NCBI GenBank assembly: GCA_951804945.1
Contig: OX638151.1
Coordinates: 75,268,001-75,332,000, forward strand
Reading direction: 5' to 3'
DNA: 64,000 nucleotides
DNA from: Podarcis cretensis
Lineage: Eukaryota
The translations under genes and the position numbers were made by a program. The notes below the pieces were generated by a model that did not search any database, was not told the origin of the DNA, and saw only the letters and a program-made list of their open reading frames with translations. The first letter of the stretch is position 1. Every line of letters starts with the position of its first letter. Below are positions 13,245 through 37,254 of the stretch, piece after piece.

Positions 13245-13820
13245 TTAAGGGTCCATTGGTTCAACTGCTTCTTGCTTGACCTTTATAGGTACCCGAGGTA
13301 GTGGATGACCTTGAGGCAACTTCACAATTGACATATCTGATGATTCATAAAGGTTACATCCTGAGGAAACCAGCCCATTTCCCAGGTTCCTCTGCAGCGA
13401 TGCTTTAAGAGTAGCTCCTTCCATCTCTCGTTTAAGCACAGCAAGTATTTCTTTTTCTACTATAGATGCCATGTCAATGTTGTCCTCAACATCGTCCAGC
13501 CTGTCTGCACTGTCACTAATGTCAAATTTCTCAATCTCTTCATTGATCCGGTTGAGGTCCTCTGTCGAAAGGGTGGGTTCAGGGACAACAGGGCAGTTGC
13601 CTTTCAGGTGGACCTTGAGGCTGCAAAGGTGGATATAGCTCTTGTGGCAGTGGATACACTTGTGCGGGCGCTCTCTGGTGTGGAGCCGTTTGTGCAGTTT
13701 CAAGTGCACAAACTGGGTAAATTTAGCAGTGCAAAGCTTGCACTGGTAAGGCTTCTCTCCAGAATGTAGCCGCAGGTGGGTCTTCAGGTTGCTCGTGCTG
13801 CTGAATCGCTTGTGGCAGAC
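13245..13820 (-). CDS. PRDM1: PRDM1 exon 7 coding part (576 nt; zinc fingers 3-5 and C-terminus ...KVKQEAVEPMDP*)
   Basis: gatcag|GTCTGCCAC acceptor; VCHKRFSSTSNLKTHLRLHSGEKPYQC...; TAA at 13247-13245; includes ORF 13245..13709. Confidence 0.97.
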   Translation of the reverse strand, partial: VCHKRFSSTSNLKTHLRLHSGEKPYQCKLCTAKFTQFVHLKLHKRLHTRERPHKCIHCHKSYIHLCSLKVHLKGNCPVVPEPTLSTEDLNRINEEIEKFDISDSADRLDDVEDNIDMASIVEKEILAVLKREMEGATLKASLQRNLGNGLVSSGCNLYESSDMSIVKLPQGHPLPRVPIKVKQEAVEPMDP

Positions 13821-14057
13821 CTGATCAGGGAGGAGAGAATGAGAACCTTAGAAGAAAGGTGGTAGTTTGCTCTTTGAAAATGCATAAGTAATTATGAAAA
13901 AGTGTCATCCAGTCTTTTTACTTTTTCATTTATCTCCATTTAGAAAACCACAACTGACAGCAACAAACAGTTGTGTGTTCCAGTCGTGTGCTCAAGTCTG
14001 CTTCAATGTTATTTTGCACCCAAGTCATGATCTCATTGTATACTAATTGTGACATAC

Positions 14058-14186
14058 CTGACATTCATGGGGCTTTTCTCCTGTGTGTACCAGATAGTGC
14101 TTTTGGAGGTGAGCCAGCTGAGTGAATCCTTTATTGCAAGTAGTACATTTGAATGGTCTTTCTCCACTGTGTACTCGAAGGTGAAC
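14058..14186 (-). CDS. PRDM1: PRDM1 exon 6 (129 nt; [43 protein letters not shown]), zinc fingers
   Basis: Translated by hand; aag| acceptor, CAG|gtatgt donor, phase 0/0. Confidence 0.97.
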
Positions 14187-14817
14187 CTTTTAAGAAACAG
14201 AACATTTATTATACTTTAGTAATAGCTTCCAAGATAGTGTGTTAAATATCCTAATCTAATTGTTGAGTATCTAAAATACCAGGCACTGTTGCTTTTATTA
14301 CTTTTGCCCAAAGTTGCACAATATACAGTTAACTTGGATAGGCTTTAAAAAAGGCTCCCTAAAAAGTACGTTTTTTTTAAAATGCAGCAGTGGAACTGTT
14401 CTCTAAGTTTCTAGGGATATTTTGCACTTATTGATGATCCAACGAAGAACACAAATTAAATCTGGCTATTCCATGGATGCTCTCACTTAGCAGTTATCAG
14501 AACAAAAGCCCCACAAGGAATGAGAATGAAAAGATTATGTCCACTACATGCTAAAATCAACTTGTTCAATTGTTGCAGGGAGTTATCATTTGAAAATGTC
14601 AAAAGGTAATTAAACCTCAAAGGTTTATTAAACCTCAAAAGTTATTACCACAATATCAAGATACTATACTAAAACCAACATAGGTGATTAAAGCCTAGAA
14701 GAAACAGGTGCTTAAGAAAGACTTTCCAGAGAGACAGTAACCAGATTAGTTTGGGGTTTTGTTTGTTTGTTTGTTTATTTGTTTGTCTAGAAATGATATT
14801 TTCCTTCAAAGGCCTAC

Positions 14818-15863
14818 CTTCAAATTAGAGAGCTGACCAAAGGTTTTGGAGCAGACATTGCATTCATACTTTATTTTCCCATTCTGTTTCTTCAGTGGGT
14901 ATGGGAGGGTTTTGTAACCAGTCATGTTTCGCTTGCTCTTGATAAGATTCATGGCTTCTTCACTGCTGGTGGCAGCCAACACTGCTGAGGTAGGTTTAGG
15001 TTGCATTATGTGTTCTGAAGTGGCCGCTGTGCCAGCTGTGGGCGATCCACTACTTGGGCTACATGGCTTGTCCTTCATACTGGCAGCTGCCCCTGTGATA
15101 GAGAAGGCACTGTTATGTGCAGGGATGAGGAAGTCCCTTGGATGGTCAGGTTGCAGCAGCTGTCGGCTTCCATCAGATGGCAAGGAACTTGGAAGTCCTG
15201 GAGAGGAGTTCAGCATATGATTGGGGATGCTTCCTCCACTGAGTAGGCTGCTGTAGAAAGGATACATCCTTGGAAAGAGGTTGAAATTGTTGATGCTCAT
15301 GCCATATGGTGGTAATAAAAATTTGTGGTAGGGAAAGGCTTGTGGGAGATGGCTTGAAGGTGCATACCCAGAATATGCCCCTAATCCTTCTGAGTTATAG
15401 AGTCCATTCAAGTAAGGATAAGGTTCTCTGTGCTCTTGAGTCATAGAAGCTAGGGGTGAGACTGTAACTGGGCTGCTGTGAGGGCTTGAGCTTTTCAAAC
15501 TTTGGTCTGGACTACTTCTTGCTGAGGGGCTTGGTGTGGTAGAAGACTGGATAGGTGAGTGGGCAATGTAACTTGGCCTCTCAATCCTATAAGCCTTCAG
15601 GTAATCTTCAGGGATGGGCGGTCGGATTGGGTAGACAATACGAGGATAGAAAGGCTTTTCAGGACTACAATTTTTTCTCAAGCCCTCCAAGTCTTTTTCT
15701 TGAGTATGTGGATAAATGTGGCTATAAAATAATTCCTTTCCTTTGGGATTACTGGAATCAGTTTTCAGGATTTCCTTCACACTGTGCTCTCTTCTGGGAA
15801 CAGTTTTTAGATAAAGTTCATCTTTGTCATTAGCTGGCTGCTTTGGATTAACATGGCTTTGTG
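14818..15863 (-). CDS. PRDM1: PRDM1 exon 5 (1046 nt; Pro/Ser-rich repression region and start of zinc finger 1)
   Basis: ORF 14806..15885; atttcag|CA acceptor (phase 1 matches exon 4), AAG|gtagg donor; [34 protein letters not shown]. Confidence 0.97.
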
Positions 15864-16371
15864 CTGAAATATAAAAACATGGCAATGAATTTTTAAGGCC
15901 AGTAAAGACAATTTACAGACATTGGTCATTAGCCTCTGCCTTAAAACACACATATAAATAGTCATTCCTAGGTATTTGCATTGGTGGGAGGACTAGCACA
16001 GCATTATACTCAACAGAAATAAACTCAGTAGCTACTTATTAAATCCTGGGTGATTATCATGATCCAGTCGGTTCATTTCTGCTACATTTGTTCTAGTCTC
16101 ACCTTTCTTGTATATTATTGGATTAAACTGATTACAGAAAACACAGTAGCACCTGATGCATACTTTGTAGATAACAAGGCAGCTTACTATATACCTTTCT
16201 AAGGCAAAAGGATTTGGCTGTTCCAGCTCCTTCGACTGCTTCTAACGAAAACAAACAAGTTTCAACACTCATCACTTTAAAAGGTGACTGAGTGCCTTGC
16301 AGTCATGCATGAATAACAGAACTATGGATGAGACACACAAGAGGTGCTTCTAAAAGCAAAAAAAGACTATT

Positions 16372-18432: not shown

Positions 18433-18682
18433 TTATATTCATCACCAGGTCTCCAGTGGAAGGATAGTGTAACCTTTCCGCAAAGTCCCGGCAATACCAC
18501 ACGAGCAATTCCTGGCCAGGTGGTATGGGTTTGATAGTATAAAAGTAGACATCCATTCCATTCTGACAAGCAGCCAAGTTCTGCTCCTGAACAGAATGTG
18601 CTGGGTTTACATAACGCATCCAATTGCTCTTTTCCTCATTGAATCCATCAATGAAGTGGAGAAGCTCACCACCAGAATATAT
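18433..18682 (-). CDS. PRDM1: PRDM1 exon 4 (250 nt; [30 protein letters not shown]...[17 protein letters not shown]), PR/SET domain
   Basis: Within ORF 18425..18751; ttccag| acceptor, A|gtaagt donor (phase 1); NWMRYVN and ELLVWY PR-domain motifs. Confidence 0.97.
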
Positions 18683-20235
18683 CTGGAAAGAATGGAAGAT
18701 AGAAATGTAAGGTATAAATGGAAAATAACCCTTTTTTTTAAAAAAAGGCAATGAAACATACTACTGGATGGTAAGTACCCTTTATAGAATGTAGGAGATC
18801 ATCCAAATGGAATATACTTTGTAACTTTTTTTCTGATGCCATGTGTTATTTTGATGCTTAGCATTCAAATGAAAGCATGCTATTTAAAAGTTCAGTATTC
18901 AGTGCCTCTGCTTTAAGACTCTTGGACTGCTGGTCAACAAGTGGGTGGTATTATTGACTTAAGGTCTGACTGTGTGCTTGCAATAATGTGGTGAGTCACT
19001 TTTGTAAAGACTGATTAGCATGGTTATGTCACAACCAATTCCTTGCCCTTGTCTCTCTCTCTCCCCCCCCTTATGGCCTCTTTACTTGCTGTTTCCTACC
19101 ATCACCACCCAAAGCTTTAAGCTACGCAAATATCAACCACCCCAAAGTCCTAAAGTGACACTTGAGCATACTTGGAATGTAGCCCTTTTGTTAAAGGGCT
19201 GGTGGGGTAAAGTGAACTGTATTTCGTATATCTAACAGGAGATCTGGAAGCGGGCCAGATTGTGACAGCAAGAGAAATATTTTTCTCTCTCAGCTGGTAT
19301 GTTTGAGAAAATATAACTCTACAGCATGTGATATATCCTTGTTTTCCAGTGTGCATCTGAGAACATGAAAGTGAATATAGAAAATCCATGACAAAGCTGT
19401 ACCTGTAGACTAGTGTAACCTTGCTTTCAGTTTACCACTGAAACTATGGCATAGTTAACTATAGTTAACTGGTAACTATAAGGTTGTGAGGTTTTTTTTA
19501 AAAAAAGTTTCACAAGTCATCATGTTCAAATAGGAAATATTTGTTTTTTTCCTCTTTCCTGCCTTGTTCCAAAGGGCTCTGGGCCAGTGACAATATGCAT
19601 CCTTGTTTCATTTTACTTAAAAATAAAATCCCCATGAAGTAAGTTAAGTGTCATAGATTAGTGTAATGACTGAGATAGAATTTCAGTTTGGTTTTCCCAT
19701 GTCCGAATGCAATGTTGCACCATTTCCCTGTGCTTTTTGACATGCACGTTCAATTTCTTCTGAATGCTGTTTGATGTAAGAATCGACTGAGAAGTCATTA
19801 AAAAAAAAGCAGCAACAAAAGCTGGCCTTTTAACACAGGCAGTAAACACCAGAATCACTTTCTTACTTCCTGTCATTTGAGGCTGAGGAAATACATGTGG
19901 CTTCATCAAAGAAGCTTGAGAGATTTTGCGGTGTTTTTGTTATGAGAAAGATGGAACAAAGCCTGAAGAATTATGCACTCAAGAGGAGTTTGTTAGCTCC
20001 GATTTGCAAGCTTCCAGGAACTGAGTTCCATTGATGTACACTTCTATTACAGATAGAAACTACTTTCCGAAGTTAGACCAAGTGACTTCCAGTCATCTTT
20101 CCAGAGCTAGTAGAATTTACTGTATTGCTTTCTTCAAAACACACACATCTCACTGCAGTAAGATCGAATGGCCTCGTAAAACTTTATTTTGCCACCTCAC
20201 CAGATTTCCGTGTATCGTGTGGAAGATTAAAAATG

Positions 20236-20246: not shown

Positions 20247-22361
20247 ACTGTAGCAATTACAAGAAATGACATCACCCTGGAGTTTGCACAGCATATTCAT
20301 GCCTTCTCTTTTTAGAGGGTATATTTTGAATGGAACATTTATGCTTACATACAACAGATGTTCCTGTTCCTGCCAGCCAAATCAGGATGTCTTTTATATG
20401 ACATGTGGGAAATTATCTTCCACAATTTCCTTTGCATGTGCAAGACTGTTTTCAGGCCCTTAGGAAAGAACCTTTTCTACTTGGAGAGTGTGTGAAGCAA
20501 AAGAATAAACAAAAGTAAATACCAAGACTTTTCAGAAGGCACATAACACAAGCATGATGTTAGCTTCCTCAATGAAAGTCTGGAATAACATCCTGTTACA
20601 TAGTCAGAATCCTCCTGTAAAATTTGTTTAATTACTTAAATGTGCTAATGACTAGTCTGAAAGCATGCATGCTTCTAGGGTGAGGCCACAATATTTTCCT
20701 GCCTGAGATGAAGGAAAAAATGGCACCCTACTCCATTCCATGTACTGACGCATGGCATACAAAAGTCTACCCTTCAACACCTCACCACTGCTCTCTGCCC
20801 CTTAGCAACTGCCGCCTAAGGCTGCTGCCTTACTCTGTCTAATGGTAGGGCCAGCTCTGCACCCTTCTTTAGTTCTCCTGATGTGAGTACTGAAAGGACT
20901 TGATGACAGATGCCAACTGGCATCTCCCAGTGCATGAGATTCCTTAAAGTGTATTTTATTGAAAAAATACTAATAGTTAAGGAGAACAGAGAGTCAAGTC
21001 ACACTTGTTTCTATTGAATCATTAAGATGTAACAAAGGAAAACATGGAAACAATGTTTAAACGGCCAGCTTTCAGAATGACATGTGATGTTGGAATGATC
21101 TGATACGTGGCAAACACTCAGATGCAGCAGGACAGTTTCCTGCTGCCGCCACACAAAGGTTTAAGCTATGCAACTATCCCCCACCCTGAATCCTAAATTA
21201 AAACTTATTTGTACTTGGAATGCAGCCCTTTTGTTGAAGGATTGGGTTGGGTAAAGTGCATTGAAGTTGGTATACTTTAGTAAGCCTCTAGAATGGAAGA
21301 AACCTGACAGCTTTGCCATTAGACACTCGTGTCTTTGGTACTTTTCTTCCTGCAGCCTTTAAAAAAAAGAATGATGTGTGTTGTTGTTGTTTTTTAAAAG
21401 CTAAATTCTTTTTATAATATTTATTGCGCTAAGAAGTGACATCTTGCCTAAGGCATTACAGAGGCACATATCTGATATTTTAGCCCAGGGATGGGGAATG
21501 TCTGGCTTTCTGGATGTGTTTCCGTTCTAACTCCCATCAGTCCTGCCATAGCCAGTGGTCATGGATGGTGGGAGTTGTAGTCCAACAACTTCTGAATTTT
21601 TAACCTTACAACAATCCTGTGAGGCAAATTAGATGAAGACAGGTGTAGCCTACATTATGTCTCCAGATATTGTTGGACTACAGCTCCCATCATTGGTCAT
21701 GCTGGCTGCAGCTCTTGGAAGATGGAAGTCCAACAATATCTGAAGGGCACCACATTGCCTTCCCCTGGATTAAGAGACAGGGCCTTGCTCAAAACTATCT
21801 GGTCAGTGAGTGTCCAAGCCCAGTACTCCAGCCAGGAAGTGCTATTTCCCTTTATCACAACTATTAAATAAGGGCATCTTGAGACAACAGGCTTGGCAGC
21901 ATTTTAGGAAGTGGCCCTACTAACTTGTGCAATGGAAGACAATTACAATAGTTCAGTACTTCAAAAAGTAATTCATCACAGAGTATGAGATTGAGAAATA
22001 TTACTAATTAGTCTGAGAAACATTCTAGGGTAAGGTTCATAGTGAAATTAAGGGACAGATGATTTAAAAAAACAACAACTGGCACTGTATAGGATTGTGA
22101 ATCAGCAAGCTTTAAAAAAATCTGATCTAACAATGAAGTATTGTAGGACAAATAAAAAAGATGCTTTCTATCATTCTCAGTTCACTCACTCAGTTGTATT
22201 TCACTCAGCGTATGTTCACTCAGTTCACCTGTATTTCTGTTAACATATTGCCACCTCAACCATCACAACTTAAGCAGGTGTCAGCACTGAAGTGTGGTTT
22301 CTTTTCAGTGGTGCTTATTTAACGAACCATTTACGCATAACCATTAGTTTTTCCTACTTAC

Positions 22362-22481
22362 CCGCCAAAAATACTTCCTGTTTGCATCCTTAGGAACTGT
22401 GCCATTGGTATAGATTTCACCAACCAAGGGTCCAAAGCGTGTTCCTTTGGGGATAATGTCTTTGCTAATAACTCCAATAAC
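22362..22481 (-). CDS. PRDM1: PRDM1 exon 3 (120 nt; [40 protein letters not shown]), PR/SET domain
   Basis: Translated by hand (not in the ORF track); tttcag| acceptor, |gtaagt donor, phase 0/0. Confidence 0.96.
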
Positions 22482-23079
22482 CTGAAAGGAAAAGAGCACA
22501 TGTCAAACCATTTAAATAAGTTTATGCGTTCACACAGGAAAAACAGATTGATACAAAAGTGCCCTACACTGTTATTACAGGGAAGCAGTCAATGTAAAGG
22601 CAAGGGATCCCCCACCCTCCTTTGTCTCTAGAGTGGGATTTATTTCAGCACTTAGTGATGTTGCAAAACTATAATCTTTTGGAAATAACACATACTAAAA
22701 AGCATTGCAAAGGTGAGTAGAATTTGTTTATCTGTTTCTGTGATCACCTGACAGTATGACATGAGTACTGGCTCACTCTCAAAGAACTTATAGGTGAATG
22801 AACTATAAAAGTGGCCTTAGGAGATTAGAGAGAGAAAAAGCTGAGAAACACTGGTGACCAATGGTCTAACTGCCTGATTTTTGCATGGAAGAACTCAGAA
22901 CTTGAATGCGACATTGAGATGCAATTATCACATGCTATAATACCCATTAAAAAATGAAATTTCTGTGGAGAAATAGAGTCCAATAAAGCCTGCAGACATG
23001 ACATTTGAAATCTACCTTGCTAGTTACATATTTATGTTTATAGTCCTGGAATTCTGATGACACCCAGCCCTGTTTCTTT

Positions 23080-30878: not shown

Positions 30879-32525
30879 ATTCTCAGAGTTAAGCGTATAT
30901 AAAAGAGTAAATGGGAGCTGGACTTCCTATTCCCTACAGCAAACCACCAGACCCCAAAAAGCTCTACTGAGGATTAGGAGCCTCTGCTGAATGGACTAAG
31001 AGGGAAGGTGGATCCCCCCCTAAATCATGCCATGGTACCTTCCATAAGTGGAACTCCCACAGGTGGAAGGTGCTTCTGCCTGATTTTTGGGGGACCCCCA
31101 TTCTCCCACAGTCCATCCCACTCAGCAGAGGCTCAGAGCTCTTGGTGAAGCATTTTTGGGGGCCGGGGGGTGGGTTGCAATGGCAAGCAGGAATGTCAGC
31201 TAGCTCTGTGCTTAACTCTGGATCCAATCCATTATTTGCACATATTTATGTTTGCCAATACAAAGCTGGCAATTTTAAAAAAAGTTTTTTCAGCCAGCTT
31301 GTAATGTGGCAAAGAAGATCAAACCAAGCAAGCGAGCCACTCTAGCACAGAAAAATGATGTTAGCTGCTTCCTAGATATTAGCTGATGCTCAGGCTGATC
31401 AATTAAGTGCCATTTGTCAAGAGTTTCACAGTATCCCCACCTAAGTCATATGCACGGTATATACTAGGTACATTTTAAAGCTTCTAATTCTGTTTCTCAT
31501 AGCTAATCATTTAATTGGGCTTTATGGGAGTGTGAAATAATGCAAGTCCATAGAGATAATTAGCCTATTACAAGTTTCCTGGTCATTCCCCAAAACTGTG
31601 ACATCCAGATCCAGTTTATATCAGTTGAAGTTCTGGTCCCCTTTCTACATACAAGCCTTTCCATGCTATTTGTTGTAGGAGGATACATTTAATAACTAGA
31701 AAGGAATGAATTTACACCCTCCCTTAGCTCCGTGGTCAGTTTATTTAGCCACAGTAGCAGCACAGGTTATAGCTGTTCCACCACAAGTTGCAGGACAGGG
31801 ACAAAAATGATGGGCCGTCCCTACCATTATTAACTAGCTGAACTTCACGCCTAGCTATAATAGCTACTCTATATGAAGGAATAAACAGGCAACCAATTGC
31901 TCATCCGGGATAATTTTTTCCAGCCCTTCTGAAACAACAACAAAGAATGTACCCACTCCAGAGACATGGACTGAAATATACCTGTGCGTCCAGCTACAAA
32001 TAAAGGTGCACTGCCCTAGATAAACAAGTCACATAAATACAGGCTACTTATTTAATGACCTGGCCTTAACATCATCCTTTCTTCTTGGAACCCTATAAAG
32101 AACTGATACAATAAGCCTATTTAAAAAACCCCTCAGTCTAATAATTCAAGGAACAACAACCCATTTCAATGCAACCATAGTATTTCACTACCTGATCCAG
32201 GAGTAGAGAATGTTGTTCTCTCCTACAGATAGGTATGATTAGAACCCGGATCTACAATACAATCTTTAGAAATTTCCATTCCTAAATTAAGTAACATTCT
32301 TGCCTATTTAGCAACACAGACATTAGTCGATTTACGGCAGTTTGGAGATGTTTGTGCTTTCCTGTGCAGAAGGTATTTTCTCCAGGTGTATTTCTAGGGG
32401 TGAACCTTGGAAAGCCATGACACCCAAACATTAAAGAATGTAGAAATCAAGAAGACAAACCCACTTCCAAGAACAATGTGATCTGGCTACCAGGTTTGAA
32501 TCATCCTTTGCAAACATGTTCTTAC

Positions 32526-32708
32526 CTCTTTGCCATGTCCTGCATATTTGAAAATCAAGTTCCTTGGCAAGGAAGACTCAGCCTGGGTTACATTGCAGCC
32601 TTCTGTGCTGGGCTCTGTGGGGTGGTCATTTACAATGTAGGTACACTTGTCTTCAAATTCAGCCTCTGTCCATAGAGTCATGTCAGCATCCTTCATGTCC
32701 ATTTTCAT
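32526..32708 (-). CDS. PRDM1: PRDM1 exon 2 coding part (whole exon 32526-32775); start [22 protein letters not shown]
   Basis: Acceptor ttttccag|GCTGCC at 32775; ATG at 32708 with A at -3; ends ...GKE|gtaag. In-frame TGA codons upstream make this the first usable ATG of the main frame. Confidence 0.95.
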
Positions 32709-32744
32709 TATCAACTCTGGTCCTTTTCTTCACTGCTCTGGGAT

Positions 32745-34384
32745 TCACAATATACGAGCTACACAGTGTGGCAGCCTGGAAAAGAAAAGAAAATTTACTT
32801 CCCATTCCTTTCTCAGCACCTCTAGCATTGTGACCTAAATGCTGTCTATTGGCAAATAGATGGCATAAGTGGGATAGCTGAGGACTGACACCATATACCC
32901 TATACCCTATAAATTGAGCTGCCTTCCCTGAAGGAATGCTTTCAAGAGCTGGGGCTGGTAAAAATAACAAAGTCACAAAAAGTAATAGGAAAAGCATGTC
33001 TGAGAACAGCACCTGTGCGCACCTCTTTAGAACCTCCCCTCAGTATCTGAACGGTAGGGGTGGGGGGATGAATCTGCAGATTCAAGGCTTTGTGTGCAAA
33101 AGAGCCTGTGGAAAAGCTGCCTTGGAAAAGTGTCATAAACAAGGAAAGGAAAAGGAAGGAACTGCTGTCTGCGTCTGAATGGGCTAAAAATGGAAAGTGC
33201 ACGTTGGACGAGCGGAACACAGGCTTGCCTTTTCCAAATGGGGAAGGCTGAACTTTCCCACCGGCTTCTAACACACAAACAACTTTCAAAAACAACGCTC
33301 CCCTCCCCTCTATTGACATCCTCTTATCCTCTGACACAGACAGCTGAGGGAGACTGTATCCTACCAACATCAGTCTGAAAACAGCCAGTCTGAAATAACT
33401 AGAAATATTCACTTGGATCAGAAAGAGACAAAAATACAGTAGTATTGTTTTCTGTGCCTTCCAACAGAATTAAATACAAAGTGCAAAATCTACCATCAAT
33501 ATAGGGATTGAACTGCATTAGATATGCTGTATGGCATTGGCTCACTATTTCAAACCTCAGCCATGTACTCTCCACAGGCAAGCCTCCCCTGTGCTTCAGT
33601 TCCCCGTCTACAATATCAGGAAAATACTTTTTTTTAGGGTTCCTATAAATGTTAGCACGTACTATTTGTGTTATACTCTCATTCAGAAAAGAAGATATTT
33701 TAAAAGAAGAGGAGTAATAGTATTCTGTGGAAAAACTAAATATCAGAAGAACACACTTACAGAATTAAGTTTTACTTACCCATTAAAAAGATAATGTTAA
33801 CATATCATTTTGTTTCCCCAGGTATAAAGTTACTGGATTAAACTACAGCATTTTCCAAAACAAAGGCTTTAGGCTCCAGCATTGTACTGCTAATCCTACC
33901 AGAGATTTTCATTTGTATCTGAGTAAAGCAGGGTCATATTTCCAACTCAAAGAAGTGTTTTTCAGAAGATGAAGTGTTTGGAAGAACAAAGTTATCAACT
34001 TAATTCCACACTTCCTCACAGCATTGAGCAGATTTAATAGTTCTTCATACGGTGCTTTTAATGGGCTTGATGAGATCAAACCTTAGTACAATCTGAACAA
34101 TACCTTTACCACTTTGTAGGCTATGACAAGAGAACTAATACTGAAACTCAGTGAACCGGCAGTTGCCACTAGCAGTGAAAGAATTAATCATCATAAAAAC
34201 AAAGGTCTCTCGAACTTTAAGAGAAAGTCTCCAAGAAGAACCTTAACAGGTTTGCCGTCTCCATTCAAAAGAGTTCTAAAACCATCTGTCTCCCGGACAG
34301 GAGTAGGAAGAAAATTTCTTACCAAGGTACAGTCCACAAATAATTCCAGCTGGCAGCACGACGTTTCAGGTAAGTCTCACACAT
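32745..34384 (-). other. uORF2, spliced (34384-34323 + 32775-32745), 30 aa MCETYLKRRAASWNYLWTVPWLPHCVARIL*
   Basis: 62 nt in exon 1 plus 31 nt in exon 2; the stop lies 36 nt before the main ATG; translation not demonstrated. Confidence 0.7.
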
Positions 34385-34575
34385 ATCTACAGAGTAAACA
34401 TTACTTCTTCCACTGGCCGGGTTCAAGTAATACCAATAGAGCTAGCTTCTTTTGCTTCTGCTTCTGCTTCTGGCTCTGTCTTTACTGTCAGACAGGTGCT
34501 GCTGCACTTACTGCTTCAACTTCTTTGAAACACTGGAGGGCTGAATGTTACGATACTTTCAGTCTGTGTTAACCA
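34323..34575 (-). other. PRDM1: PRDM1 exon 1 (5' leader, carries uORFs)
   Basis: Minus strand ends ...GTACCTTG|gtaaga (donor at 34322-34321). The 5' part (GGTTAACACAGAC...GCCCTCCAGTGTT...GCACCTGTC) resembles the human PRDM1 mRNA 5' end as I recall it. TSS approximate. Confidence 0.8.
34387..34401 (-). other. uORF1 in the PRDM1 leader (ATG TTT ACT CTG TAG; MFTL*)
   Basis: Read directly from the exon 1 minus strand; translation not demonstrated. Confidence 0.7.
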
Positions 34576-34740
34576 AACAGACTCTTCCTTTCTCCTCCCT
34601 GTTTCAGGTTTCCTATTAGCCACTCATCTGATTTACTCACAGTCACGGCTGCCAAGAGCAGGGGGTGGGGCTATACCTGTAACTCACACAGGTATATCCA
34701 ATGAAACTCTGATCCAGTCAGAAGGAATTTTTCCTTTCAG
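34576..34740 (-). promoter_or_regulatory. PRDM1 proximal promoter
   Basis: Immediately upstream of exon 1; GT/GC box gggggtgggg at 34661-34670, CCAAT at ~34698-34702, no obvious TATA box. Confidence 0.6.
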
Positions 34741-37254
34741 CAGATCACACCAATACAGTTTTTCCTGTTAACACGTATGTCTGCTAACATTCTGCTGGCA
34801 TCCAGCTTAACTCACATGCAAAAGGACAAACATTTGGTGGTGTAACACTAGAAACTATGACCTAGTGCTTAAATCTGTTTATTTTAACTGGGCATTTTTC
34901 GAACAAACATGCTTACAATTTCCAAAAAAAAAAAGTATTTACAACAATATTGTTCTCCAGGTTGCATATTTTCTTACAATTCTGAGTAGTTTTATATTTT
35001 ACAAGGTAATCTTACACATGTCTACTGAAAAGTAAGCCCCACTGAGTCCAACAGGACTTGCTCCAAGGTAAGTGAATGTAAGATTTCAGCCTTAACTTTG
35101 CACTATTTTAAAAGTGCATCATTTCAAAGTGGAAACTAAGCCTGTCCCTGCTTTAAGAGAGAATGGGTCATATGCTAACAGAAAGAAAAGTTCCATCAGC
35201 GATGCTTTCATTAGACACAATCACTTAAAGAGCATGTTGCTGATCAAAGAAGTATTGGTGTGAATATAATTAAGAGATAATTAAGAGAAACATGTGCTGT
35301 TTCTTTTTCCTCCTCTCCCTGTTAGTGAATTGCCATGAAGGAAGGACATCCTGTGATGATGGCATACAGTGTCCTGTTTGTTTATTATTAAGCGCACAGA
35401 CCTTGCATTCCTATTTCTCATTACCAAACAAACCAGATGCCTAACTTCCTTCAGTGGTCCTTGTCCTTCATTGAGGAATCCTTCAGCTCACAACAGTTAT
35501 GATGATGCATAGTTCCAATTATAGTCACTCACAATATTACAAACATCACCCAGTCAGTTCACCAAAGGACAAGTCTCCTACTTTTCCTTTTTACATCACA
35601 TCAGCAGACATGTTTTTTTTATTATTATTATCATGCCTTTCCTCTTACGTGGGCAGAAACTTGTTTTGACTTGCTATAAAAATGCAAAACACAACTACCT
35701 GTCTATATGGAAATCTGCATTGTTCGAAGAAATGTCCATTCTGTCTGATGCATACACCATACCATCACCCTCCTGAAGTTCTTGCAGAAGAAGGTGAAAG
35801 GGATTATATGTCATTCTAGGTGACACAGTACTGAGAATAGTACATATCTGTGTAAAGACCTTTGGCATCTTCTAATAGAGAAGTACTCATACCGTTGGAC
35901 ATAAGTAGGACAACAGCGCCAAACAAGTGTCCTGGCTTAACTGTTACTGGTACGTAATTCCACAAGAAAGGTGGTAAGGGCATCACACTGATGGGTATAA
36001 AGGTAATTGGATATGCAGTAGGAAGAAACATTTGTTTAAAGCAAAGAAATCTGGCCACCTTGACTTGGGTAATTAACTGATCCTGAGATAGAATCAGAGG
36101 CCTATTAACAACAATAGAGGCTACTTAAAAACATACTCAGCATTGACATAGTAAGTCTGTGGCCTATAGATATATGGTAACCCACACACCAACACATTCC
36201 TGTAGCTACTCAGAAATACATTGATTTGGGGAGGGATCTTTATAACCTCAGCTTTATCACATGGCTGGAAGTTACAGATGGCTAGCTCTCCAAATCAGGA
36301 GTATAAATTAAAATGACCACCCCACAGCTGATGGTTGTCTGTTTTTATTCAGGGTGGCCAGAGATCAGTTTCTGTCTATTGCTCCCATAACATCTGTGGG
36401 AACATATCATGTAAATCATGTGACTGACATGGTTTATTCCCACCATGTCACTGTCCTACAGTGATGGGCAACCTCAGATATCCATGGCAACTGGCATGAC
36501 AGCTTCCTATAAATGTTGCTGCTAATAAGCAGCAGATCTTGTCCTACAGAAGCAGTGAACATGCAACTCATGTAACATGAAGTGGCCTGAGTCACTTCAC
36601 ATGGAGTGGAAAAACAATGTAGTCATACTGAAGCTGTCTACCCCACCCACTATACCAAGATATAAGTCTCACTTTGACATGGATATGTCTCAGAGCTTTC
36701 TAGGTCCCTGGTAATTTAAAAATAAAAAGCAGAAATTACAAAAACAAAATTATTAACAAACAGCTTTTCAACGCAGGCTTTTTCTGCCCATCACTAAAAA
36801 AGAATGGTGATTCTTCTTGCCTATCATGAAATAGCTATTTTGCTTTTCATTTGATTGAAACAATGACGGTGGGTGTTGGAAGGCTAAACTCTGTTTGCCC
36901 ACCATTGATTGTGTGGGCACTGATGATATTCAGCAGAATACAAAAGCGAGCTGCCGGCACAGCATTAATTACCATTGTAGAGCACAGTTGCAGTTACTGC
37001 TCCTATGCACATACCTGAGTTACACTAGGACTAAGGACACTTAGGATCCAATCTCTGTTCAGCCATTCAATATATGCTAGACTAACTACCACAGCAGTTA
37101 AAATGCGGGTGGGAGAAAACCATGTATGCTAGTTAAAAAAATTTGAGGAAATTTTATATAAAAGGTGGAGCTCATATGTGATGCCGCAATGAAAAATGAG
37201 ACACACCACTTCCCCCTGCCCCTTTTGCCTTGTGAGTACATTGTCATCAGTTTA

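What the first reader, a model, noticed from the sequence alone, without database searches (positions are those of the whole stretch)
32745..34401. Apparently amniote-conserved two-uORF cassette (4 codons + 2 nt + 30 codons) in the spliced PRDM1 leader
Seen: once exon 1 is spliced to exon 2, the leader reads ATG TTT ACT CTG TAG - AT - ATG TGT GAG ACT TAC ... CCT TG|G CTG CCA ... TTG TGA, then 36 nt, then the main ATG. That is uORF1 (MFTL*) followed by a junction-spanning 30-aa uORF2 (MCETYLKRRAASWNYLWTVPWLPHCVARIL*), which the genomic ORF track cannot show. Recalled, not verified: the human leader reads ATG TGG ACT GGG TAG - AG - ATG AAC GAG ACT..., giving MWTG* and MNETFLRCWIFAWKNVWVRPWLPPSVTPAL*, with the same lengths, spacer and stop position and shared M-x-E-T-[YF]-L, W13, W17 and PWLP. 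The long mouse Blimp-1 N-terminus (MREAYLRCWIFSWKNVWVRP, also recalled) would be this same frame. Inference: this is an ancient translational control module and possibly a conserved micropeptide. Ribosomes that translate uORF1 could not reinitiate 2 nt later, so they would bypass uORF2 and reach the main ATG, while ribosomes that leak past uORF1 would be captured by uORF2. This could tune Blimp-1 dosage, for example under eIF2-alpha stress in secretory plasma cells. I am not aware of it being described as a conserved unit.
Basis: partly seen in the sequence, partly recalled or inferred. Interest (0 to 1): 0.88.

Follow-up and report, generated by a model that had tools for sequence, protein, structure and literature searches.

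The report
Two upstream ORFs in lizard PRDM1 leader
The predicted leader of a lizard's PRDM1/Blimp-1 mRNA holds two small upstream reading frames exactly as described; the longer one starts where one starts in several mammals, but it overlaps the old start of the long PRDM1 protein, so the claim of a conserved peptide or control module is only partly supported.

Summary
The sequence observation is correct. On the minus strand, uORF1 (MFTL*, 34401-34387) is followed after 2 nt by uORF2 (ATG at 34384). With the GT/AG junction 34323|32775, uORF2 reads 30 codons to a TGA at 32747-32745. The PRDM1 start (MKMDM, 32708) lies 36 nt further on. The species is a lacertid.

Python, wall-lizard and mammalian gene models use the same junction.

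Gene models of camel, deer mouse, vole and a bat begin at an ATG exactly 62 nt before the same donor, in the same frame, with similar residues. The uORF2 stop is also present in a bird contig.

Codons 8-30 of uORF2 overlap, out of frame, the ancestral tetrapod long-isoform start (MLDxCLEKxVxTTL|AA..C.S..). In this lizard that ATG is ACG. All the 'conserved' Trp and PWLP residues are explained equally well by that other frame.

I found no paper describing PRDM1 uORFs.

Verdict: a real, plausibly regulatory uORF pair. Conservation is shown only for the start and stop of uORF2. The micropeptide and stress-switch ideas are unsupported.

The parts
34323..34627 (-). PRDM1 exon 1. The 3' end is fixed by the donor. 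The 5' end (TSS) is not determined; it is given here as the end of the ATG-free stretch.
   Evidence: GTAAGA donor after 34323. No ATG between 34402 and 34627. Python model P0324 aligns to 34355-34323 (E 2e-5).
34387..34401 (-). uORF1: ATG TTT ACT CTG TAG (MFTL*). G at -3, T at +4.
34385..34386 (-). 2-nt spacer (AT) between the uORF1 stop and the uORF2 ATG
34323..34384 (-). uORF2, exon-1 part: 20 codons plus 2 nt of the split Trp codon (MCETYLKRRAASWNYLWTVP-W). G at -3, T at +4.
   Evidence: It is the best tblastn hit of the deer-mouse long N-terminus in the 2.3-kb region (E 0.011). Shuffle test.
34362..34364 (-). ACG at the position of the tetrapod long-isoform start codon: 14 codons before the junction, frame -1 relative to uORF2. 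A vestigial start.
   Evidence: Frame translation ..V*DLPETSCCQLELFVDCTL|AATLCSS against MLDxCLEKxVxTTL|AA.. in mammals and Ascaphus, and MPGCQLEVFVDCTL in python.
32776..34322 (-). Intron 1 (GT...AG), 1547 nt
   Evidence: The junction is homologous to that of annotated models. Not verified by reads.
32745..32775 (-). uORF2, exon-2 part: the last base of the Trp codon, 9 codons (LPHCVARIL) and TGA
   Evidence: TGA is at the identical position in bird contig L001.
32709..32744 (-). 36-nt spacer between the uORF2 stop and the main ATG. It contains a second in-frame TGA and, near 32713-32721, a 1-nt length difference from Podarcis muralis.
   Evidence: Window frame A reads ..[11 protein letters not shown], against P0299 ..KKRTKLIMKMDM.
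32694..32708 (-). Main start cluster ATG AAA ATG GAC ATG (MKMDM). The first ATG has A at -3; the second has A at -3 and G at +4.
32523..32775 (-). PRDM1 exon 2
   Evidence: tblastn of squamate PRDM1 proteins. 78% identical to bird contig L001.

Best explanation
This is the 5' leader of PRDM1/Blimp-1 in a lacertid lizard.

Shown:
- Exon 1 carries two upstream AUGs in moderate context.
- With the predicted splice, uORF1 (4 codons) stops 2 nt before the AUG of uORF2. uORF2 is 30 codons, crosses the junction and ends 36 nt before MKMDM.
- uORF2 is the lizard counterpart of a reading frame that begins 62 nt before the same donor in mammals.
- In most tetrapods that frame overlaps, out of frame, the AUG of the long PRDM1 form (MLD..), which lies 20 nt downstream.
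- In this lizard that AUG is ACG, its frame is closed upstream, and it is shifted before MKMDM. The protein therefore starts at MKMDM and uORF2 is a pure uORF.

Inferred mechanism (scanning rules; Kozak and Hinnebusch models of leaky scanning and reinitiation):
- Ribosomes that start at uORF2 translate 30 codons and end only 36 nt before the main AUG. They reinitiate poorly, so uORF2 damps PRDM1 synthesis.
- Ribosomes that start at the very short uORF1 resume scanning. They cannot reload the ternary complex within 2 nt, so they skip uORF2 and can reinitiate 131 nt further on at the MKMDM cluster.
- The balance of the two start sites sets a constitutive ceiling on Blimp-1 output.
- In mammals the same pair would also bias the choice between the MLD (long) and MKMDM (short) starts.
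For: - Sequence and frames.
- Gene identity and exon map.
- ATG-free leader of 223 nt upstream of uORF1.
- Same junction in python, Podarcis muralis and mammal models.
- ATG at -62 in four mammals, with the same register and similar residues, including codons 2-7 that lie upstream of the MLD ATG.
- Same TGA in a bird contig.
- Positions 10/11 of the frame-A extension are [V/M/L][R/K/S/N/T] in 64 of 81 distinct segments. Among amniotes the only true exception is one mole-rat.
- The only difference from P. muralis visible inside uORF2 (Cys/Arg in the other frame, i.e. TGC/CGC) is a silent CGT/CGC change in the uORF2 frame.
- The leader has no unusual RNA structure (z +1.2), so scanning is plausible.
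Against: - No RNA evidence was obtained for the TSS or the junction in this species.
- uORF1 and the spacer were not seen in any other species.
- Conservation of uORF2 codons 8-30 is confounded by the overlapping long-isoform frame. Identity to mammals is about 38% in both frames.
- Five of six residues in codons 2-7 vary among the species seen.
- The mammalian evidence comes from automatic gene models in four species, found only because an ATG exists there.
- A caecilian model (P0429) has Gly at the codon that would have to supply 'AT' of the -62 ATG, so the start is not tetrapod-wide.
- No ribosome-profiling or reporter data exist.
Confidence: 0.5

Rival explanations
1. By-product or relic. 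The 3' part of exon 1 and the 5' part of exon 2 are conserved because they encoded (and in mammals and amphibians still encode) the long PRDM1 N-terminus in another frame, or because of nucleotide-level promoter or splicing constraints. The open uORF2 frame and its Trp codons are passengers. In the lizard the two uAUGs have at most a generic, unselected damping effect.
For: - The frame-X homology MLDxCLEKxVxTTL|AA..C.S is conserved from Ascaphus and salamanders to mammals.
- W13, W17 and PWLP map onto L-E, V-[GD] and T-L|A-A of that frame.
- Percent identity is equal in both frames.
- A 30-codon overlapping frame stays open by chance about a quarter of the time.
- The exon-2 leader is about as conserved between lizard and bird as the coding part.
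Against: - The -62 ATG and codons 2-7 lie upstream of the MLD ATG and are still positionally conserved between lizard and mammals.
- uAUGs are normally purged, and this leader is otherwise ATG-free.
- The lacertid has lost the long-form start and (in this species) its frame, yet it keeps uORF2 intact.
- Residue changes at frame-A positions 10/11 preserve NTG-A, which favours constraint on the TGA.
Confidence: 0.3
2. Functional micropeptide. The 30-aa uORF2 product (Trp-rich, M-x-E-T-Y-L...PWLP) is itself a conserved bioactive or ribosome-arresting peptide.
For: Same length to the junction and the same stop position in lizard, mammalian models and bird exon 2. Shuffle tests are significant.
Against: All strongly conserved residues are shared with the overlapping coding frame. 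Most other positions differ between lizard and mammals, and among mammals. The exon-2 part is LPHCVARIL in the lizard against LLRSVARTL in the bird, 5 of 9 identical, no better than the other frame. No peptide evidence was found in the Ribo-seq ORF supplement files held.
Confidence: 0.07
3. Not in the mature mRNA. The TSS lies downstream of the uAUGs, or exon 1 is spliced differently, so the cassette is not translated in this lizard.
For: No read evidence could be obtained. An alternative promoter-like conserved block and alternative first exons exist in intron 1 of other species.
Against: Good donor and acceptor. The same junction is used in other species' models. Mammalian models include the homologous ATG. 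Three runs guessed to be RNA hold 0.23-0.27 of the sampled words of 32480-34600, close to the exonic share of about 0.24; this is a weak hint only, and nothing was laid.
Confidence: 0.08

Closest known systems
ATF4 / GCN4 delayed-reinitiation leaders
   Same: A very short 5'-proximal uORF that should allow resumed scanning, followed by a longer inhibitory uORF. In mammals the longer uORF overlaps an annotated start (MLD..) out of frame. That overlap is inferred from protein models.
   Different: The gap between the uORF1 stop and the uORF2 AUG is 2 nt, not about 90 nt. Skipping uORF2 would therefore not depend on ternary-complex level. In the lizard uORF2 ends 36 nt before the main AUG instead of overlapping it. 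Induction by stress is not predicted and was not tested.
Annotated long N-terminus of rodent Blimp-1 (models of deer mouse XP_006996762.2 and vole XP_038195607.1; the 856-aa mouse form is from my own knowledge)
   Same: Same ATG, same frame and same 62 nt to the donor. MSEPYLRCWIF[SF]WKNVWVRP against lizard MCETYLKRRAASWNYLWTVP.
   Different: In rodents an extra exon (..CQGLHFKIVLLQGSLLYTALDSYSTVQ) brings this frame into the main ORF. No such exon was found in the lizard intron. There the frame ends as a 30-codon uORF.
Canonical tetrapod long PRDM1 N-terminus MLDxCLEKxVxTTL|AAxxCSS..-MKMDM
   Same: It is encoded by the same nucleotides as uORF2 codons 8-30, in the -1 frame. The lizard still reads ..TSCCQLELFVDCTL|AATLCSSYIVN.
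   Different: In this lizard the start is ACG, a stop lies 5 codons upstream of it, and a 1-nt shift separates it from MKMDM. It is not an N-terminal extension here.
Generic overlapping uORFs (uoORFs) of Ribo-seq ORF catalogues
   Same: Short AUG-initiated ORF in a leader, overlapping an annotated start in mammals.
   Different: No PRDM1 entry was found in the supplement files held for two catalogue papers. The files may be truncated, so this is weak.

Membership tests
Regulatory uORF (general) | AUG upstream of the main start within the mature mRNA | tested here: inconclusive
   Present in the predicted spliced leader. TSS and junction are not verified by RNA. The junction is supported by homology to other species' models.
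Regulatory uORF (general) | Start and stop conserved across species | tested here: inconclusive
   uORF2 start: lizard plus four mammal models. uORF2 stop: lizard plus bird DNA, plus a compatible protein pattern.
Regulatory uORF (general) | Ribosome occupancy, and an effect on main-ORF output | not testable with these tools
   No Ribo-seq or reporter data. No paper found.
ATF4/GCN4-type stress switch | Short permissive first uORF | tested here: met
   uORF1 has 4 codons.
ATF4/GCN4-type stress switch | Intercistronic distance long enough that ternary-complex level decides whether the inhibitory uORF is used | tested here: not met
   2 nt between the uORF1 stop and the uORF2 AUG.
ATF4/GCN4-type stress switch | Inhibitory uORF overlaps the main CDS out of frame | tested here: not met
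   In the lizard uORF2 ends 36 nt before MKMDM and is in frame with it, with two stops between. In mammals it overlaps the MLD start; that is inferred from protein models only.
Conserved-peptide uORF / micropeptide | Amino-acid conservation beyond nucleotide or overlapping-frame constraint | tested here: inconclusive
   About 38% identity in both frames. Conserved residues are shared with frame X. Codon-level data from other species were unavailable.
PRDM1 long-isoform N-terminal extension | In-frame AUG in exon 1, and an open frame through to MKMDM | tested here: not met
   ACG at 34364-34362, a stop 5 codons upstream, and a 1-nt frameshift before 32708.

The most novel reading that the evidence does not exclude
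The uORF1-uORF2 pair is an amniote-old start-site selector. In species that keep the MLD AUG, it partitions ribosomes between the long (MLD..) and short (MKMDM..) PRDM1 proteoforms and caps total output. Lepidosaurs, having lost the MLD AUG (ATG to ACG in lacertid and tuatara models), kept it as a pure dosage governor. This would give a translational layer to the well-known dose sensitivity of Blimp-1 in plasma cells, T cells and germ cells.
Probability: 0.2. Interest if true: 0.65.

Novelty: new member of a known kind. Interest (0 to 1): 0.45.

Why it matters
Blimp-1/PRDM1 is a dose-sensitive master regulator of plasma-cell, T-cell and primordial-germ-cell fate. Its control has been studied almost entirely at the transcriptional level. 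I found no paper in the held library on its leader uORFs.

A conserved pair of uAUGs placed just before the canonical start could explain three things:
- why databases disagree on the protein's N-terminus (rodent long form, MLD form, MKMDM form);
- why 5' alterations such as alternative first exons change protein yield;
- where to look for non-coding disease variants.

The practical gain from this check is a corrected picture. The frame is shared with the long-isoform start, so any test of conservation or function must separate three overlapping readings of the same 90 nucleotides.

Tried and rejected
There is therefore no read evidence. No letters of 35335-35392 were sent to any search tool afterwards, and my later scripts stopped at 35300. 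The local tblastn runs had the whole window file as subject, and nothing from that place was used.
- Morgan et al. 2009 (PMC2772737) is not held.
- Literature searches for PRDM1/Blimp-1 with uORF, upstream open reading frame, translational control or leaky scanning gave only PRDM16/PRDM14 or unrelated hits.
- Supplement files of two Ribo-seq ORF catalogue papers hold no PRDM1 entry.
- A region search with the camel N-terminus found only two cluster representatives.
- The exact look-up of the 149-aa antisense ORF over exon 1 showed it is not in the collection.
- The rodent extra exon has no counterpart in the lizard intron.
- The one metagenome scan gave a single bird contig (L001). It holds exon 2 but ends before exon 1.
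- The N-terminal pieces of the B10K 'partial' bird models are read-through of the 3' end of intron 1, not exon 1.
- No unusual RNA fold in exon 1.
- No BLIMP1-type motif in the conserved intronic blocks.
- The higher BLOSUM score of the uORF2 frame over frame X was rejected as evidence. It comes from the weight of Trp matches on the same nucleotides.
- The joined (spliced) uORF2 was only translated locally.
- No human contig was fetched or compared. Primate entries appeared only as rows of protein tables.
Full report
**What is in the sequence**

Read on the minus strand, the region holds, in order:
- an ATG-free stretch;
- ATG TTT ACT CTG TAG (34401-34387);
- AT;
- ATG TGT GAG ... CCT TG (34384-34323);
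- GTAAGA.

At 32776 a long pyrimidine tract ends in CAG, followed by G CTG CCA ... TTG TGA (32775-32745). Then come 36 nt and ATG AAA ATG GAC ATG (from 32708).

In this species uORF2 is in frame with the main ATG, with two stops between them.

The nearest ATG upstream of uORF1 is at 34627. A 223-nt ATG-free stretch has P of about 0.012 at the local ATG density. Both uAUGs have G at -3 and T at +4. The main cluster has A at -3, and its second ATG also has G at +4. Exon 1 shows no unusual RNA structure (z = +1.2).

**Gene and species**

ORFs and tblastn place all PRDM1 coding exons on the minus strand, at 32523-32708, 22359-22484, about 18440-18688, 14809-15864, 14004-14189 and 13248-13823. The protein is 98-100% identical to Podarcis, Lacerta and Zootoca PRDM1 in the large exons. 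The window is therefore from a lacertid lizard.

**The junction**

Indirect support is good:
- The donor and acceptor are strong.
- A python model (P0324, ..CQLEVFVDCTL|AAAQCSS..) uses the homologous junction.
- The Podarcis muralis Ensembl model (P0299, ..FVDCTL|AATLCSS..) uses it too.
- So does every mammalian long-form model (..GTTL|AAPKC..).

Three runs guessed to be RNA hold 0.23-0.27 of the sampled words of 32480-34600, close to the exonic share. This is only a hint.

**Conservation of uORF2**

I therefore used about 440 PRDM1 protein models, obtained from one profile-free search and two homology searches and from cluster listings.

Four automatic models begin in the uORF2 frame:
- camel: MSDTCLRCWIFAWKNVWVRPW
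- deer mouse: MSEPYLRCWIFSWKNVWVRPC
- vole: MSEPYLRCWIFFWKNVWVRPC
- a leaf-nosed bat: MSDTFLQCWIFAWIN

. In the three that run to the normal donor, the ATG is 21 codons (62 nt) before the junction, exactly as in the lizard.

Ungapped similarity in that register beats 20,000 shuffles at p <= 5e-5 for the three full-length peptides. For the two rodents I set the split last codon to Trp. For codons 2-7 alone, p is 0.0001-0.008. The deer-mouse N-terminus finds uORF2 as its best hit in the 2.3-kb region. The extra rodent exon that brings it into frame has no counterpart in the lizard intron.

The same table of N-termini shows that the last 14 codons of exon 1 are coding in another frame in most tetrapods:
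- placentals: MLD[ILF][CYL]LEK[RL]V[GD]TTL|AAPKCSS..GTMKMDM
- marsupials and monotremes: MLDF[CY]LEKLVDTTL
- the frog Ascaphus: MLDFCCEKRVETAW
- salamanders: MPQMPDLCLDRLLDSTL
- caecilians: MLDL/F.. forms

. This is the canonical long PRDM1 start. It lies 20 nt downstream of the uORF2 ATG, in the -1 frame.

The lizard still reads ..V*DLPE-TSCCQLELFVDCTL|AATLCSSYIVN.. in that frame. However, the start position is ACG (34364-34362) and a stop lies five codons upstream. The frame is also shifted by one base before MKMDM, relative to P. muralis (..KKRTKLIMKMDM against ..[11 protein letters not shown]). The tuatara model also begins with Thr at that position, while the python model has Met there.

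Consequently W13, W17 and P-W-L-P of uORF2 are the same nucleotides as L-E, V-[G/D] and T-L|A-A-[P/T] of the long-form frame. Identity between lizard and mammals is about 38% in both frames. The higher BLOSUM score of the uORF2 frame only reflects the weight given to Trp. These residues are no evidence for a conserved peptide.

**The stop**

In frame A, the uORF2 TGA is made of the last two bases of codon 10 and the first base of codon 11.

The single metagenome scan returned one contig, L001. Its exon-2 peptide is 62/62 identical to many bird PRDM1 proteins, so it is avian, not human. Its DNA reads GCT GCT ACG CAG TGT AGC TCG GAC GCT GTG AGT. That gives the same TGA at the same place, and LLRSVARTL* in the uORF2 frame against LPHCVARIL* in the lizard.

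Across 81 distinct frame-A segments, positions 10/11 are [V/M/L][R/K/S/N/T] in 64. Most of the rest are offsets of my pattern. The true exceptions are frogs, caecilians, one mole-rat and one bat with a one-residue insertion.

The alternatives seen at position 10 (M, L) are what first-base changes of GTG give. All five residues seen at position 11 can start with A. This fits selection on TGA but does not prove it.

Between lizard and bird, the 31 nt of exon 2 within uORF2 differ at 7 sites. There is no clear excess of silent changes in either frame (my count).

**Limits of the conservation claim**

- A caecilian model that extends upstream in the long-form frame has Gly at the codon that would have to end in AT. 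It therefore has no ATG at -62. The start is at most amniote-wide.
- The bird contig ends before exon 1, and the long 'partial' bird models are intron read-through. Nothing is known here about bird exon 1.
- uORF1 and the 2-nt spacer were seen only in this lizard.
- The recalled human strings were not checked. From primate-type MLDICLEK I would expect ..CWISAW.. rather than the recalled ..CWIFAW... That is inference, not a test.

**Mechanism**

By the standard scanning rules (an inference, not shown here):
- A 4-codon uORF lets 40S subunits resume scanning. A 2-nt gap is too short to reload the ternary complex, so these subunits skip uORF2. They can reinitiate 131 nt later at the MKMDM cluster.
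- Subunits that leak past uORF1 can start at uORF2, 17 nt on. They translate 30 codons and stop 36 nt before the main AUG, which disfavours reinitiation.

uORF2 would therefore damp output and uORF1 would relieve the damping.

This is not the ATF4 logic. Skipping uORF2 does not depend on eIF2 activity, and in the lizard uORF2 does not overlap the main ORF. Stress induction is therefore not predicted.

In mammals the same pair sits directly in front of the MLD AUG. It could bias the ratio of long to short proteoforms.

**Novelty and verdict**

I found no description of PRDM1 uORFs in the held literature. PRDM1 is absent from the supplement files held for two Ribo-seq ORF catalogue papers. The -62 ATG itself is not new: it is the annotated start of the long rodent models.

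The finding is a real and plausibly functional uORF pair. The start and stop of uORF2 look amniote-old. The 'cassette', the micropeptide and the stress switch remain untested, and the peptide conservation is largely explained by an overlapping coding frame.

I rate it a new member of a known kind, of moderate interest.

Noticed in passing
window 33104-33371 (intron 1): A 270-nt non-coding block is 83% identical to bird contig L001 4050-4323. Its translation also appears at the N-terminus of a capuchin model (P0256..GKVQSSPFGKG..LLVCDTFLRQLFHS). In the bird and in mammals it is followed at once by an alternative first exon opening with MTPG/MTPR... It is probably a conserved alternative PRDM1 promoter. 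The lizard has no ATG at that spot.
   Followed up: partly
window 31726-32027 (intron 2): A second conserved non-coding block, 80% identical over 304 nt to L001 2513-2811. No BLIMP1-type motif was found in it.
   Followed up: partly
window 32776-32805 (3' end of intron 1): An ATG 30 nt before the exon-2 acceptor, in the long-form frame (MGSKFSFLFQ|AATL..). It recurs in bird (MRIKGCFLIFQ|), turtle, monitor lizard, camel and lungfish models. It is either an unspliced or alternative-TSS isoform start, or a coincidence of branch-point and pyrimidine-tract sequence.
   Followed up: no
window about 32713-32721: A one-base length difference from Podarcis muralis puts the AATLCSS.. frame out of register with MKMDM in this genome, while the P. 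muralis model is in register. It is either a real lineage difference or an assembly indel.
   Followed up: partly
window 34440-34476 (exon 1): A short GAAGCA-type purine-rich repeat (gccagaagcagaagcagaagcaaaagaagc) in the leader upstream of uORF1.
   Followed up: no
window 34123-34572 (+): A 149-aa ORF antisense to exon 1. Its exact sequence is not in the protein collection. It is probably a mechanical ORF.
   Followed up: partly
I left it unread and sent it to no search tool.
   Followed up: no
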